A stretch of 64,000 bases of DNA from Gracilinanus agilis (GCF_016433145.1 NC_058130.1:738225051-738289050), one strand, 5' to 3'. Positions 1 through 61,408 are shown, counted from the stretch's first letter. Translations and numbers: made by a program. The notes: generated by a model not told the origin, from the sequence alone.

Positions 1-1053
1 CCCTCTCCCCTGGACACACCCCCTGTGCAGGCCCCTCCCTCTCCCCTGGACACAGCCCTTGCGAAGGCCTCTCCCTCTCCCCAACCCATACCTCTTGTGC
101 AAGCCCCTCCCCATCCCCTGCCCATTGGGCTCCTGACCCCCTCTCCCCTGGCCACAGCCCCTGTGCTGGCCCAGCCCCACTTGCAGAATGCCCCTCCTGG
201 GGAGCTGCCCCTCCCGGAGCCTGTCCTTTCCTTGGGAGCCTTGGGTGGGGAGCTGTCCAGAAGCCCTTCTAGTACTCTGAGTGGCCCAGACCTGGCTGGA
301 CACAGCAGCAGTGCCACCAGCACCCCCGAGGAGCTGCGAGCCTATGACAGTGGCCCTGAGATAGGGGCCCCAGCTTCACCCCCAGCCGATCCTGACCTCG
401 AGCTTGCTGCCTGCCATCCTGCTGCCTGGAGCCGTCCTGGGGTCCCCACCCGGAGCCCCTGTACCACTTCCCCTCGACTTCCCCATGGGGTCCCAGGTAA
501 CTCCAGCCAGGGGGCGGAGGGCGAGGGGCTGGGGGAAGGGGTTTGCTCTCTGAAGAGGGGAGAGGTCTCAACCCTGTCCCTCTCTCTCACAGGCGAGTCA
601 CTGCCCTGGTCACCTATGTCTGGGCCCCCTGATGGCCTCTCCACAATCTACGAGTCAGAGGCCCCAGAAACAGCATTCGGACCCCCAAGCAGGGAGGTCC
701 AGGATGGGGAGGAAGAGGACGATCGGACAGTGGAGAAGATGCCTCCAGCCCCTCGCGGTCCCAAGCCAGCTCGAGTGGGCGAGCTGCAGCTGGGAGCATT
801 GCAGGCCAGCGTGGTACAGCAGCTGCTGAGCCGGACCCTGCTGCTGGCTGCAGAGGGCCCAGGGGGAGCCAGGCAGGGCCCCGGGGGTGGCCGTCCCGCT
901 CTGAGTGATGCCGAGCTAGGCCGCTGGGCAGAACTGCTCTCACCTCTCGATGAGTCCCGGGCCAGCATCACTTCTGTCACTAGCTTCTCCCCAGATGATG
1001 TGGCCTCACCCCAGGGAGACTGGACCGTAGTGGAGGTGGAGACCTTCCACTGA
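1..1053 (+). CDS. PRR36: Proline-rich protein 36, 3' part (5'-truncated by window); join(<1..496,593..1053)
   Basis: Pro-rich PSPLDT/PSPLAT repeats, then C-terminal [38 protein letters not shown] (DUF4596-type end recalled for PRR36). Donor CCAG|GTAACT at 497, acceptor ctctcacag| at 592. Convergent with EVI5L as at the human locus. Confidence 0.9.
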
Positions 1054-1305
1054 GATGTCCCGTCCTATTCCACGCAAAGGACCACGGCGCCCTCCGGCCC
1101 GAAGGCCCCTGCATTTTGCTTGTTTTCCTTAGCAGGGGAGGCTGGGGAGAGGCGGGAAAGCCCTGATGGCGGTCTAGCTTCTAACACCTTCCGCCTGCGT
1201 CCCTGGCACTGAATGTACGTTGTAGAGTGTCCTTGCTGTATTGTTCACGTGGCCCCTGCAGTCTGTGTGGTGTGTCTGTGTTTTCTAAGAGGCCTTTTAG
1301 TTTGT

Positions 1306-60500: not shown

Positions 60501-61408
60501 GCTAGTGTTGCTCCTCACCAGTCCTACCTTGAGCAGCTTTTCTTTTTTGCGACGCCACTCCTCCCACTCATTAACAATTCGGCCCCAGAGGATCCAAGTG
60601 TCCTCCTCCAGGTGGCTGAGGTTGGAAGAGGCTGAAGAGCTGGACACCAGGGAAGAACCGCTGTTTCGCCGGGAACCATTCATAGAACGCATTGACTTGG
60701 AGTCAGCCTCCAGAAGCCTGGGTGGGAAGGAGGGCAAACAGAGCACAGAAACACAACTGTCACAGAAGAGCTGGCTGACTCTTCTTTTCTTAGAGGTGGG
60801 CCTTGGGCCTTTGATTTCTACTTTGCCATTCTTTGCCTGGATGGGACCATATATGCAGCCTAATAACATGAAGTTTTAGGGACCCTGTTCAGCAGCTAGG
60901 GAGTAATGAGAAAGGAGAGTTGTAGTAGCTAGGGCAAGAGCAGGCCAGTTCAACCCCAAATCAGTAAAGTTCTAATGCTGTCCAATCTCCCAGTTCTCAT
61001 GCTCCTCACAAACTTCCCTCATCCCAGACTTCCCCCTAGGACTTTCTACCTCTCCTGCCCCCAATTCCTTGGATCCTCCCCTTTCTTTGTATGTCTGCCT
61101 TGGAAAATCAGTTTTTAAAGGCTTGCAAACGGATTTATGCAAGTCTTTGTGTAGTTCCTTATTTAGTATCATGTACAATTTGATCCTTTAAGAAATGCTT
61201 TAAGGTTGGTAAAAATAACAGCCCCTTTTCCACGTCTTACTTAGGAAGCAAGTAGCCCTTTATTCACTCACCGATTCTGTTCCTCTAGCTTGGCCAACAG
61301 CTCCAGTTCATCTGGGCTGAGGTTCTCAGAATCTGAGGTGGGAGAACAGGCAGGGCCTGAAAGGGCCTCATGGGAAGAGGAGTCAGGGCTAAGGGCTGGG
61401 CTCGCCAT
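9233..61408 (-). CDS. EVI5L: EVI5-like Rab-GAP (TBC domain + coiled coil), 19 coding exons, 2424 nt, 807 aa including the 33-nt cassette
   Basis: Spliced translation MASPALSPDSSSHEALSG...IRRDIARTYP...GYCQG...DELAPSYGQSLGN* matches recalled EVI5L throughout. TBC Arg finger (IRRDIAR) and Gln finger (YCQG) intact; all introns GT-AG with consistent phase. Confidence 0.97.
10860..11048 (-). mobile_element. Opossum-type tRNA-derived SINE (SINE1_Mdo-like)
   Basis: T-tail + aaacccttaccttc...gtgacttgcc..ggtcaca...ggctctcaatc family signature. Confidence 0.8.
11296..11391 (-). CDS. EVI5L: EVI5L coding exon 18 (REEGMIQ...LKAE)
   Basis: 96 nt, AG/GT bounded. Confidence 0.95.
11518..11613 (-). CDS. EVI5L: EVI5L coding exon 17 (SKEEVM...LEIQ)
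   Basis: 96 nt, AG/GT bounded. Confidence 0.95.
11817..11963 (-). CDS. EVI5L: EVI5L coding exon 16 (DQIHRN...AECK)
   Basis: 147 nt, AG/GT bounded. Confidence 0.95.
12228..12383 (-). CDS. EVI5L: EVI5L coding exon 15 (AHLSRGG...LETQ)
   Basis: 156 nt, AG/GT bounded. Confidence 0.95.
13240..14030 (+). mobile_element. L3/CR1 LINE 3' fragment (interrupted by SINE)
   Basis: Degenerate CR1 3' ORF/UTR words (catccagaaaagggtg, agaagagaagac, aggcttgacataaggaaaaac); family call from recall. Confidence 0.65.
13537..13717 (-). mobile_element. Young SINE1-like copy inside an L3/CR1 fossil
   Basis: 11-bp TSD tagacttattt at 13526-13536 and 13718-13728. Confidence 0.9.
14376..14516 (-). CDS. EVI5L: EVI5L coding exon 14 (RNNSLPDEN...DSWQ)
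   Basis: 141 nt, AG/GT bounded. Confidence 0.95.
15231..15424 (-). mobile_element. SINE1-like copy
   Basis: Family signature with (TTCC)n tail. Confidence 0.8.
15957..16407. mobile_element. hAT-type MITE with nested SINE1-like copy (about 15991-16236)
   Basis: TIRs cagtggttcccaaa / tttgggaatcactg; perfect 8-bp TSD ctctagat at 15949-15956 and 16408-16415; SINE has a (TTTC)n tail. Confidence 0.9.
19091..19219 (-). CDS. EVI5L: EVI5L coding exon 13 (DNPRL...DMEK)
   Basis: 129 nt, AG/GT bounded. Confidence 0.95.
20285..20505 (+). mobile_element. SINE1-like copy
   Basis: gctaggtggctcagtggatag head through tail. Confidence 0.8.
22900..24140 (-). mobile_element. L1 5'/ORF1-region fragment
   Basis: Long T-rich strand-asymmetric block typical of reversed marsupial L1 ORF1; family call from recall. 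Confidence 0.6.
24380..25950 (-). mobile_element. RTE-clade LINE fossil (degenerate reverse transcriptase)
   Basis: Minus-strand ADDIV (24941-24955) matches the RT (Y/F)ADD motif; neighbouring segments resemble RTE ORF2; many stops and frameshifts. Confidence 0.7.
26802..27219 (-). mobile_element. Head-to-tail SINE1-like dimer inside one TSD
   Basis: TSD ttcctttgtcttct at 26788-26801 and 27220-27233 flanks both units. Confidence 0.88.
28957..29161. mobile_element. hAT-type MITE
   Basis: TIRs cagtgatgggcaaac / gtttgctcgttactg; flanks share tctagag. Confidence 0.85.
29304..29496 (+). mobile_element. SINE1-like copy
   Basis: gggcagcttaggtggctcagtg head, A-tail. Confidence 0.8.
30530..30670 (-). 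CDS. EVI5L: EVI5L coding exon 12 (GQVTRAQ...QEQQ)
   Basis: 141 nt, AG/GT bounded. Confidence 0.95.
31427..31632 (-). mobile_element. Diverged SINE1-like copy
   Basis: Family signature; shares private variants with 27003-27219. Confidence 0.8.
32810..32853. repeat. (AC)n microsatellite
   Basis: Imperfect CA run. Confidence 0.9.
33269..33301 (-). CDS. EVI5L: EVI5L coding exon 11, 33-nt cassette (ESAALADRLIQ)
   Basis: tttcggtag|GAG...CAG|gtacag; frame-preserving; recalled as the segment that differs between EVI5L isoforms. Confidence 0.92.
34811..34864 (-). CDS. EVI5L: EVI5L coding exon 10 (RLRTENRLLKQRIETLEK)
   Basis: 54 nt, AG/GT bounded. Confidence 0.95.
35856..36040 (-). mobile_element. 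SINE1-like copy
   Basis: Family signature ending gagctacccagctgccccc. Confidence 0.8.
38400..38600. mobile_element. MAR1-type marsupial SINE fragment
   Basis: ttttcttggcaaagatactggagtgg..ccatttccttctccagc followed by MIR core; family call from recall. Confidence 0.65.
39726..39891. mobile_element. hAT-type MITE (OC1/OposCharlie-like TIR)
   Basis: TIRs cagtgatgatgaacct / aggttctccatcatgg; end resembles the end of 50117-50565. Confidence 0.7.
39900..40092. mobile_element. hAT-type MITE, same family as 15957-16407 (opposite orientation)
   Basis: TIRs cagtgattcccaaa / tttgggaaccactg; TSD ctctagac / ttctagac. Confidence 0.9.
40753..40813 (-). CDS. EVI5L: EVI5L coding exon 9 (LEKEYAAIKNKEMEEQIEIK)
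   Basis: 61 nt, phase 2/0. Confidence 0.95.
40966..41063 (-). CDS. EVI5L: EVI5L coding exon 8 (YFQKVIP...KMKR)
   Basis: 98 nt, phase 0/2. Confidence 0.96.
42677..42766 (-). CDS. EVI5L: EVI5L coding exon 7 (GLEIVF...GMSQ)
   Basis: 90 nt, AG/GT bounded. Confidence 0.96.
43094..43237 (-). CDS. EVI5L: EVI5L coding exon 6 (EQLPDL...FMYE)
   Basis: 144 nt, AG/GT bounded. Confidence 0.96.
45006..45131 (-). CDS. EVI5L: EVI5L coding exon 5 (MPEEEAF...YMLQ)
   Basis: 126 nt, AG/GT bounded. Confidence 0.96.
45919..45993 (-). CDS. EVI5L: EVI5L coding exon 4 (AYSLVDREVGYCQG...LMQ)
   Basis: 75 nt; YCQG motif. Confidence 0.97.
46325..46549 (-). CDS. EVI5L: EVI5L coding exon 3 (ELIRKG...NVMK)
   Basis: 225 nt; TBC IRRDIART motif. 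Confidence 0.97.
48430..50640 (+). mobile_element. L2 LINE 3' fragment, interrupted near its end by a MITE
   Basis: L2-type words (cctctcctctt, cttaatagtgggtgtatccc, cctagcacagtgcctggcacacag...aataaatgtttg). Confidence 0.6.
50117..50565. mobile_element. hAT-type MITE (OC1/OposCharlie-like)
   Basis: TIRs tagtgatggcaaacct / aggtttgctaccactg; flanks ccttagtg / cccaagtg (imperfect 8-bp TSD). Confidence 0.8.
53060..53560 (+). mobile_element. L1 ORF2 3'-end fragment
   Basis: catagtagcac...gatagcaaaaacatggaaac...tgtggtatatg...tactactgtgctataagaaa, typical L1 3' coding end. Confidence 0.65.
53838..54039 (-). mobile_element. Young SINE1-like copy
   Basis: Near-perfect TSD cttatg(ac/cc)(c/t)tattcttt on both sides. 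Confidence 0.88.
60528..60717 (-). CDS. EVI5L: EVI5L coding exon 2 (LLEADSK...KLLK)
   Basis: 190 nt, AG/GT bounded. Confidence 0.96.
61272..61408 (-). CDS. EVI5L: EVI5L coding exon 1 (MASP...EEQNR); acceptor at 61465
   Basis: 137 coding nt; donor CG|GTGAGT. Confidence 0.95.

What the first reader, a model, noticed from the sequence alone, without database searches (positions are those of the whole stretch)
1..61408. Gene order mirrors the EVI5-GFI1-BTBD8/KIAA1107 block, supporting an ohnolog origin
Seen: EVI5L(-), then GFI1-like(-), then PRR36(+, convergent). Known from recall: on human 1p22 GFI1 lies downstream of EVI5 on the same strand, and the DUF4596 gene BTBD8/KIAA1107 lies further on in the opposite orientation; LRRC8 and TGFBR3 paralogs also pair 1p22 with 19p13.2. 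Inference: the gene dates to the vertebrate whole-genome duplications and was lost on the human lineage.
Basis: partly seen in the sequence, partly recalled or inferred. Interest (0 to 1): 0.72.

Follow-up and report, generated by a model that had tools for sequence, protein, structure and literature searches.

The report
Third GFI1-family gene beside EVI5L
A small, intact GFI1-like repressor gene lies between EVI5L and PRR36 in this marsupial, at the same spot in echidna, alligator and probably a teleost, and as a decayed relic in a bat, so it is an old third member of the GFI1 family that placental mammals appear to have lost.

Summary
On the window, PRR36 ends on the + strand at 1053. A five-exon GFI1-like gene runs on the - strand from 3107 to 1414. 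EVI5L runs on the - strand from about 61441 to 9233.

The interpretation survived its own refutation test. The same short GFI-like gene lies 6-9 kb downstream of EVI5L, on the same strand, in sugar glider (annotated), echidna (unannotated exons) and Chinese alligator. It does so in Patagonian toothfish too, if the neighbour there is evi5l (weak evidence). In fugu, canonical gfi1ab lies 2.7 kb downstream of an EVI5-type gene, which is the mirror block.

These short genes form one clade (support 92/98) outside a moderately supported GFI1+GFI1B group (87/80). Finger exons compared between marsupial and echidna give dN/dS of 0.02-0.04, so the gene is under purifying selection.

A bat keeps a decayed SNAG exon (nhmmer E 2e-5, stop at codon 8) between EVI5L and PRR36.

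Nothing was found within 10 kb of EVI5L in a turtle, an ostrich or a snake.

The dating to the whole-genome duplications is the most economical reading, but it is only bounded at the bony-vertebrate ancestor. No shark or lamprey data and no expression data were obtained. I found no paper describing this third family.

The parts
25..1053 (+). Last coding exon of PRR36; the stop codon is included. The BTBD8_C domain is encoded at about 919-1050.
   Evidence: Pfam PF15363, E 4.2e-20. tblastn matched the bat gene next to EVI5L at 88% over 51 aa. In Petaurus a BTBD8_C gene sits in the same place.
1306..1311 (+). AATAAA polyadenylation signal of PRR36.
3050..3107 (-). GFI-like gene, exon 1: ATG at 3107-3105 and SNAG domain [12 protein letters not shown]. 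The exon ends in phase 1.
   Evidence: The same exon 1 to exon 2 join appears in the wombat, devil and dunnart models P0424, P0442 and P0447. The echidna and alligator counterparts were found.
2618..2743 (-). GFI-like gene, exon 2 (linker). The annotated model P0416 instead starts at an in-frame ATG at 2762, just upstream.
2339..2484 (-). GFI-like gene, exon 3 (linker).
2014..2179 (-). GFI-like gene, exon 4: two C2H2 fingers equivalent to GFI1 fingers 3 and 4.
   Evidence: Pfam zf-C2H2, E 4.4e-11. Identity to GFI1/GFI1B is 77-84%. Identity to the echidna exon is 92.7%, with dN/dS 0.042.
1414..1664 (-). GFI-like gene, exon 5: a finger equivalent to GFI1 finger 5, then a non-finger tail (a decayed finger 6). 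Stop TGA at 1416-1414.
   Evidence: dN/dS 0.019 on the finger. Alignment A1.
1065..1141 (-). Alternative last coding exon used by the annotated model P0416 (donor after 1422, acceptor before 1141). It is antisense to the PRR36 3' UTR.
9233..61441 (-). EVI5L coding region, about 17 exons. The TBC-domain exon is at about 46322-46552 and the last coding exon at 9236-9523.
   Evidence: tblastn with P0135 and P0401. Representative search on the TBC exon.

Best explanation
The gene at 3107-1414 (-) is a functional member of a third vertebrate branch of the GFI1/GFI1B family, called 'short GFI' here. An ancestral tandem of an EVI5-type RabGAP followed by a GFI-type repressor on the same strand was duplicated as a block, most economically in the vertebrate whole-genome duplications. 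One copy became EVI5-GFI1. The other became EVI5L-short GFI, with a BTBD8_C-domain gene (PRR36) beyond it.

The short branch lost fingers 1 and 2 early. It kept fingers 3-6 in teleosts and alligator, and let finger 6 decay in the mammalian stem. It survives in monotremes and marsupials and was pseudogenised in at least one placental lineage.

Inferred mechanism: the SNAG N-terminus recruits the LSD1/CoREST repressor complex, and the three retained fingers, which are the DNA-binding ones of GFI1, bind the AATC-core site. The protein would then act as a compact repressor, or as a competitor, at GFI1/GFI1B-type targets.
For: Shown here:
- The gene has an intact five-exon ORF with GT-AG introns.
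- The two intron positions around the finger 3-4 exon are the same as in canonical fugu gfi1ab. This rules out a retrocopy.
- Orthologues have the same build in wombat, devil, dunnart, sugar glider, platypus and echidna.
- Marsupial-echidna dN/dS is 0.042 on exon 4 and 0.019 on finger 5. On exon 4, 20 of 24 differences fall at third codon positions.
- The gene lies immediately downstream of EVI5L on the same strand in the window, Petaurus, echidna, alligator and toothfish.
- Canonical gfi1ab lies downstream of an EVI5-type gene in fugu.
- In the tree, the short clade has support 92/98, alligator plus mammals 99/98, and GFI1+GFI1B 87/80.
- All 18 short-clade rows have lost the Lys of 'EKPHKC', which all 38 other rows keep. 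Alligator and several teleosts share a CPRC-type finger 6.
- The bat relic matches the SNAG exon at nhmmer E 2.2e-5 and carries a stop at codon 8.
- PRR36 carries the BTBD8_C domain.

From the literature:
- Fingers 3-5 bind DNA, and fingers 1, 2 and 6 make protein contacts (PMC5368270).
- Mouse gfi1 and evi5 form one insertion locus (PMC4030178).
Against: - There is no expression evidence.
- There is no canonical AATAAA or ATTAAA on the - strand between 1414 and the window edge.
- Nothing GFI-like lies within 10 kb downstream of EVI5L in ostrich, slider turtle or garter snake. Several independent losses, or larger distances, must be assumed.
- No cartilaginous fish, gar, coelacanth, amphibian or lamprey locus was examined, so the age is only bounded at the bony-vertebrate ancestor.
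- The 113-column tree cannot order the three clades. AU p is 0.48 for short+GFI1 and 0.34 for short+GFI1B.
- The EVI5L identity of the toothfish neighbour rests on a C-terminal match of E 0.002-0.04.
- The BTBD8 position on 1p22 is from memory.
- The DNA-binding and LSD1-recruiting activities are inferred, not tested.
Confidence: 0.8

Rival explanations
1. The block EVI5L-short GFI arose by a regional (segmental) duplication of EVI5-GFI1 in the stem of bony or jawed vertebrates, not by the whole-genome duplications.
For: The data date the short clade only to before the ray-fin/lobe-fin split. The tree does not resolve its relation to GFI1 and GFI1B. No cartilaginous fish or cyclostome was sampled.
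Against: From memory, many other gene families (LRRC8, TGFBR3, BRD, NOTCH, VAV) pair the same chromosome regions, which is the signature of whole-genome rather than local duplication. The second toothfish short gene sits next to a TGFBR3_N/ZP gene, which fits paralogy on a wider scale.
Confidence: 0.12
2. A lineage-specific copy of GFI1 or GFI1B was inserted by chance next to EVI5L in marsupials or in early mammals.
For: Mammalian members sit on a long branch (0.59 + 0.76 changes per column). The gene is missing from eutherian annotations.
Against: The gene is in the same place in alligator, and in toothfish if the neighbour there is evi5l. Alligator groups with mammals at 99/98, and teleost short genes join them at 92/98. 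The introns are retained. Holding tetrapod short genes with GFI1 costs 8.5 lnL (AU p 0.089).
Confidence: 0.02
3. The window's copy is a decaying or non-functional gene: an unexpressed relic that merely keeps an open frame.
For: No RNA evidence was obtained. There is no canonical - strand poly(A) signal downstream. The tail after finger 5 is poorly conserved, and the annotated model omits the SNAG exon.
Against: The open frame and splice sites are intact in six marsupial or monotreme species. dN/dS of 0.02-0.04 over roughly 180 million years (my estimate of the marsupial-monotreme split) is incompatible with neutral decay. A true relic, the bat's, looks quite different: it has a stop, a lost ATG, and fingers that are barely detectable.
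Confidence: 0.04

Closest known systems
GFI1 (human 1p22; zebrafish gfi1aa/gfi1ab)
   Same: It has the N-terminal SNAG motif. Its fingers are 82% identical to GFI1 fingers 3-4 and include the HTFIH form of finger 4. The intron positions flanking the finger 3-4 exon are the same. It lies directly downstream of an EVI5-family RabGAP on the same strand.
   Different: It has only three fingers in mammals and four in alligator and teleosts, against six in GFI1. It is about 230-260 aa long against about 380-420. Its SNAG has RSRR where GFI1 has KSKK. Its linker is unrelated. It forms a separate clade. Its neighbour is EVI5L, not EVI5.
GFI1B (human 9q34.13), including its short isoform without fingers 1-2 (isoform known from memory)
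   Same: It has a SNAG motif plus DNA-binding fingers 3-5. The mammalian short gene resembles, as a fixed gene structure, what GFI1B makes by skipping fingers 1-2. NCBI names several orthologues 'Gfi-1b-like'.
   Different: It is not nested in the GFI1B group. GFI1B has HTYIH in finger 4 and CKMC in finger 3. No EVI5-family neighbour of GFI1B is known to me.
Teleost and alligator 'zinc finger protein Gfi-1b-like' models (P0418, P0476, P0478 and others)
   Same: They fall in the same clade at 92/98. Where checked, they have the same neighbour (alligator; toothfish type A less surely). They share the loss of the Lys in EKPHKC and the loss of fingers 1-2.
   Different: They keep a finger 6 of CPRC type. 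Teleosts have two copies, and the type-B copy has no evi5l within 10 kb but sits beside a TGFBR3-like gene.
Snail-family SNAG repressors
   Same: From memory, the first eight residues MPRSFLVR are those of Snail's SNAG domain, which binds LSD1. An Arg at position 8 is therefore compatible with that mechanism.
   Different: The fingers are of GFI type, not Snail type.

Membership tests
GFI1/GFI1B/Senseless/Pag-3 family of SNAG zinc-finger repressors | N-terminal SNAG motif (MPRSFLV...) at the very start of the protein | tested here: met
   The ATG at 3107 is followed by [12 protein letters not shown]. The same motif is found in wombat, devil and dunnart models, in echidna and in alligator.
GFI1/GFI1B/Senseless/Pag-3 family of SNAG zinc-finger repressors | DNA-binding fingers 3-5 with the family's signature helices ([16 protein letters not shown], QSSNLxTH) | tested here: met
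   All three are present in exons 4 and 5. The best database matches are GFI1/GFI1B at 77-84%. In the tree the gene lies with the family.
GFI1/GFI1B/Senseless/Pag-3 family of SNAG zinc-finger repressors | Six C-terminal C2H2 fingers | tested here: not met
   The window, the other marsupials and the monotremes have three fingers. Alligator and teleost relatives have four. The gene is therefore a divergent branch of the family, not a typical member.
GFI1/GFI1B/Senseless/Pag-3 family of SNAG zinc-finger repressors | Shared intron positions: before ER(S/L)F of finger 3, and inside HTG|EKP | tested here: met
   See the window, fugu gfi1ab and toothfish short GFI.
GFI1/GFI1B/Senseless/Pag-3 family of SNAG zinc-finger repressors | Binds the TAAATCAC(A/T)GCA site and represses through LSD1/CoREST | not testable with these tools
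   This is inferred from conserved helix residues and the SNAG motif. The finger roles come from PMC5368270.
Ohnolog pair from the vertebrate whole-genome duplications | Paralogous neighbours in the same order and orientation on both blocks | tested here: met
   EVI5L is followed by short GFI on the same strand in five species, counting the toothfish. An EVI5-type gene is followed by gfi1ab on the same strand in fugu. PRR36 carries the BTBD8_C domain. The position of BTBD8 near GFI1 was not tested and is from memory.
Ohnolog pair from the vertebrate whole-genome duplications | Each paralogue present across jawed vertebrates (origin before their radiation) | tested here: inconclusive
   The short branch is present in teleosts, a crocodilian, monotremes and marsupials. 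It was not found within 10 kb of EVI5L in turtle, ostrich or snake. Cartilaginous fishes, gar, coelacanth and amphibians were not sampled.
Ohnolog pair from the vertebrate whole-genome duplications | Gene tree with the paralogue outside, not inside, the other paralogues' vertebrate clades | tested here: met
   The short clade is one side of a branch (92/98) and GFI1+GFI1B the other (87/80). The branching order among the three is unresolved.
Processed retrocopy | No introns, poly(A) tract, random location | tested here: not met
   There are four GT-AG introns at family positions, and the location is conserved.
Unitary pseudogene | Stops, frameshifts or lost start, and neutral substitution pattern | tested here: not met
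   None of these is seen in the window, and dN/dS is 0.02-0.04. The feature is met for the bat relic at L007:44294-45027.

The most novel reading that the evidence does not exclude
Vertebrates began with three GFI-type repressors, not two. The third is a minimal 'SNAG plus DNA-binding fingers' protein that lacks the protein-contact fingers 1, 2 and (in mammals) 6. It acts as a natural competitor or modulator at GFI1/GFI1B target sites in blood, hair-cell or neuroendocrine lineages. It still does so in fishes, crocodilians, monotremes and marsupials, while placentals (and perhaps birds, turtles and squamates) lost it. GFI redundancy experiments in teleost fishes, if the species studied carries short GFI genes, and comparisons between marsupial and placental haematopoiesis would then have overlooked a family member.
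Probability: 0.45. Interest if true: 0.8.

Novelty: new member of a known kind. Interest (0 to 1): 0.7.

Why it matters
GFI1 and GFI1B are central regulators of blood-cell, inner-ear hair-cell and gut secretory-cell fate. The field treats them as the only two vertebrate family members. Zebrafish is described as having three paralogues, two GFI1 copies and one GFI1B (PMC5003831).

A third, conserved and selectively constrained branch matters for four reasons:
- It is absent from mouse and, by inference, from other placentals, which would explain why it went unnoticed.
- It adds a candidate for redundancy or antagonism in non-placental models.
- It gives a natural experiment on what a GFI protein does with only its DNA-binding fingers.
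- It supplies a clean, small-scale example of block paralogy (EVI5/EVI5L, GFI1/short GFI, BTBD8/PRR36) between the 1p22-like and 19p13-like regions.

The current database names (ZNF358-like, ZNF836-like, Gfi-1b-like, uncharacterized) hide the orthology.

Tried and rejected
(1) The first word-based protein search on the finger 3-4 exon returned only six-finger GFI1/GFI1B, because summed finger scores outrank three-finger orthologues. The top hit, P0001, is a GFI1B model with its finger 3-4 exon duplicated, not an orthologue. Narrowing the length range solved this.

(2) Looking up koala EVI5L isoform P0375 found no gene on record. Catshark and sugar-glider loci came back without DNA because the files were too large. 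No second marsupial DNA was therefore available for dN/dS, and echidna was used instead.

(3) I tried to settle whether the short clade is sister to GFI1, as synteny would predict. The AU tests do not discriminate.

(4) Expression could not be tested.

(5) The finger 5 relic in the bat is not detectable above shuffles. The finger 4 relic is only suggestive (E 0.13; alignment score 34-40 against a null of 26, sd 3.5-3.9).

(6) A search for PRR36-like sequence beyond the alligator and toothfish genes found nothing.

(7) Literature searches for a third GFI gene found nothing relevant. The 'Gfi1c' hits are Gfi1-Cre mice.

(8) A words search of the scan's own notes was blank.

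
Full report
**What is in the window**

The window has no N runs. On the + strand, an ORF at 25-1053 ends in a Pfam BTBD8_C domain (PF15363, formerly DUF4596; E 4.2e-20, residues 299-342). An AATAAA follows at 1306-1311. This is the 3' end of PRR36.

On the - strand, tblastn with turtle (P0135) and wallaby (P0401) EVI5L maps about 17 exons from 61441 to 9236. Identity to marsupial EVI5L is mostly 89-100% per cleanly aligned exon and lower in the two C-terminal exons. The window is therefore marsupial, and EVI5L occupies 61441-9233.

Between these two genes, on the - strand, lies a compact gene that I modelled by hand:
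- Exon 1 is 3107-3050, with the ATG and SNAG motif [12 protein letters not shown].
- Exon 2 is 2743-2618 and exon 3 is 2484-2339.
- Exon 4 is 2179-2014 and holds two fingers like GFI1 fingers 3 and 4.
- Exon 5 is 1664-1414, with a finger like GFI1 finger 5 and a stop at 1416-1414.
- All four introns are GT-AG and the frame is continuous.
- No counterpart of GFI1 fingers 1, 2 or 6 is present.

**How the rules shaped the work**

The spliced model was never joined or sent to a search. Exons were searched one by one by reference. For trees and alignments I used database proteins that turned out to be the same gene (P0416, P0424 and others).

No human contig was fetched or compared. Statements about human 1p22 and 19p13.2 come from the literature or from memory and are marked as such.

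Expression therefore remains untested.

**The gene is real and annotated under misleading names**

A length-restricted word search on exon 4 returned the following proteins:
- P0416, 'zinc finger protein 358-like' of Gracilinanus agilis. Its sequence is identical to the window's exons 2-5. It starts at an ATG at 2762 without the SNAG exon, and it uses an extra 3' intron (1421-1142) with a last exon ending at 1065.
- P0424, wombat 'Gfi-1b-like'.
- P0442, devil 'ZNF836-like'.
- P0447, an uncharacterised dunnart protein.
- P0427, sugar glider 'ZNF836-like'.
- P0443, platypus 'Gfi-1b-like'.

The wombat, devil and dunnart models begin with the SNAG exon spliced to exon 2 exactly as in my model.

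**The gene is under selection**

In echidna (locus L001) the gene is not annotated, but the exons are there:
- SNAG ([12 protein letters not shown]) is at 60732.
- The finger 3-4 exon is at 61780-61944, 92.7% identical in protein to the window's.
- Finger 5 is at 62165-62245.
- Finger 6 is missing again.

Nei-Gojobori estimates between window and echidna give dN/dS of 0.042 for exon 4, where 20 of 24 differences are at third positions, and 0.019 for finger 5. That is strong purifying selection since the monotreme-therian split.

**Synteny outside marsupials**

The results were:
- Sugar glider: EVI5L (+), then a 224-aa zinc-finger gene (+) 6.5 kb downstream, then a BTBD8_C gene (-).
- Echidna: the exons start 6.9 kb downstream of EVI5L on the same strand.
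- Alligator sinensis (L004): the neighbour's C-terminal exons are 82.9% identical to turtle EVI5L. The gene P0418 ('Gfi-1b-like') follows on the same strand, and an unannotated SNAG exon sits at 9755, 6.7 kb from the end of EVI5L.
- Patagonian toothfish (L005): an 828-aa EVI5-family gene whose last exon has the EVI5L-type C-terminus. It matches bird and turtle EVI5L C-termini, the turtle alignments reaching within two residues of the last residue, at E 0.002-0.01. The short gene P0476 follows 8.9 kb downstream on the same strand.

The refutation condition is therefore not met.

**The mirror block**

In fugu (L008), canonical six-finger gfi1ab lies 2.7 kb downstream of an 890-aa EVI5-family gene on the same strand.

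That neighbour is 69.0% identical to a frog protein that I take to be EVI5, and 57.6% identical to turtle EVI5L. The alligator neighbour shows the opposite preference, at 60.9% and 82.9%. The two blocks therefore pair EVI5-type with GFI1 and EVI5L with the short gene.

Mouse gfi1 and evi5 are known as one proviral insertion locus (PMC4030178).

This is supported here only by the shared domain in PRR36. Its map position is from memory.

**Phylogeny**

I built a maximum-likelihood tree of the finger 3-6 region: 56 rows, 113 columns, LG+C20+F+G4.
- All 18 short genes (marsupials, platypus, alligator, two teleost types, tarpon) fall on one side of a branch (92/98; 93% of bootstrap trees).
- Alligator plus mammals has support 99/98.
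- GFI1+GFI1B lie on the other side (87/80).
- The invertebrate rows do not form one outgroup, so the root is uncertain.

AU tests do not reject short+GFI1 (p 0.48) or short+GFI1B (p 0.34). Holding only the tetrapod short genes with GFI1 costs 8.5 lnL (p 0.089).

Discrete characters agree with the tree:
- Every short-clade row has replaced the Lys of EKPHKC, which all 38 other rows keep.
- Alligator and several teleosts share a CPRC-type finger 6.
- The mammalian tail aligns to that finger as a decayed remnant (alignment A1).
- The two intron positions flanking the finger 3-4 exon are the same in the window, the toothfish short genes and fugu gfi1ab. This excludes retroposition.

**Loss in placentals**

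In the bat Pipistrellus kuhlii (L007), EVI5L ends at 41625, and a 984-aa gene on the other strand (PRR36 by tblastn, 88% over 51 aa) ends at 45366. No gene is called in the 3.7 kb between them.

A DNA profile of the SNAG exon hits 44294-44339 on the EVI5L strand with E 2.2e-5. The alignment to echidna scores 52 against a shuffled mean of 24 (sd 3.5). The ATG is gone and codon 8 is a stop.

About 690 bp further on, at 44978-45027, is the best match in 158 kb to the end of finger 4, with the splice donor in place. On its own this match is weak (E 0.13). Finger 5 is not detectable.

No placental short-type protein appeared among the listed orthologues. This fits pseudogenisation in the placental lineage, but one bat does not date the loss.

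**Mechanism (inferred)**

Fingers 3-5 of GFI1 and GFI1B bind the AATC-core site, while fingers 1, 2 and 6 make protein contacts (PMC5368270). The short gene keeps the three DNA-binding fingers, with nearly unchanged recognition helices, and the SNAG motif.

I therefore expect a compact SNAG-dependent repressor, or a competitor, at GFI-type sites. This is not tested.

Points against full confidence in function:
- No RNA evidence was obtained.
- The C-terminal tail is variable.
- There are two possible 3' ends.
- There is no canonical - strand poly(A) signal before the window edge.

**What is known**

Full-text searches found no paper linking GFI1 with EVI5L and no paper describing a third GFI gene. 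The zebrafish literature counts three paralogues, namely two GFI1 co-orthologues and one GFI1B (PMC5003831).

The scan has no note of it on other DNA.

**Verdict**

The gene is a new, unnamed branch of a known family. It is old (at least as old as the bony-vertebrate ancestor), constrained, syntenic with EVI5L, and lost in at least one placental.

Assigning it to the whole-genome duplications is the best reading, but it still needs cartilaginous-fish and chromosome-scale data.

Noticed in passing
window 2762-1065 (-); protein P0416: The public model for this gene in Gracilinanus agilis is named 'zinc finger protein 358-like'. It starts at an ATG at 2762 and so omits the SNAG exon at 3107-3050, which the wombat, devil and dunnart models include. 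Orthologues carry four unrelated names.
   Followed up: yes
window 1065-1422 (-) against 1054-1330 (+): The annotated model splices from 1422 to 1141 and ends at 1065. Its last coding exon runs antisense through the PRR36 3' UTR, to within 12 bases of the PRR36 stop. The unspliced reading stops at 1414. No AATAAA or ATTAAA lies on the - strand below 1414.
   Followed up: partly
L007:44294-45027 (+), Pipistrellus kuhlii: This is a decayed relic of the short GFI gene between EVI5L and PRR36. The SNAG exon is clearly recognisable (79% to echidna DNA) but has no ATG and a stop at codon 8. The end of finger 4 is faint. The SNAG part is better kept than the fingers, which is unexplained.
   Followed up: yes
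L006:10001-27474, Dissostichus eleginoides: The second teleost short GFI gene (type B, P0478) is on another chromosome. It has no evi5l within 10 kb but lies convergent with a 759-aa TGFBR3_N/zona-pellucida gene. TGFBR3-type genes are among the families that, from memory, link the 1p22 and 19p13 regions.
   Followed up: partly
alignment A1, columns 260-285: The marsupial tail after finger 5 (RPLP.R..CPP.Q) aligns with finger 6 of the alligator and fish proteins (RPF.CPRC..SFQ). It looks like a finger that lost its first cysteine.
   Followed up: partly
teleost proteins P0444, P0487, P0516, P0476: Type-A teleost short GFI proteins keep one finger-like motif (CP.C.K.FSC.SSL..H.C) upstream of finger 3. 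It may be a remnant of finger 1 or 2.
   Followed up: no
protein P0001: This is a 406-aa GFI1B-like database entry with the finger 3-4 exon present twice in tandem. It is probably an assembly or prediction artefact, and it topped the first search for that reason.
   Followed up: partly
proteins P0139, P0409 (chicken EVI5L models): Both models end in a long PNVCVP/PNVWVP repeat instead of the conserved EVI5L C-terminus. This suggests read-through into a tandem repeat in a poorly assembled microchromosome region.
   Followed up: no
They lie at the end of the PRR36 coding sequence and were left alone afterwards.
   Followed up: no
window about 6990-7060: A (CA/TG)n microsatellite lies in the EVI5L-short GFI intergenic region. 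It reads as a run of HT in one frame.
   Followed up: no
runs X2-X20: Runs of three other coded organisms hold 6-8% of the sampled 31-letter words of window 1300-3200. These are presumably the finger exons of close relatives.
   Followed up: no
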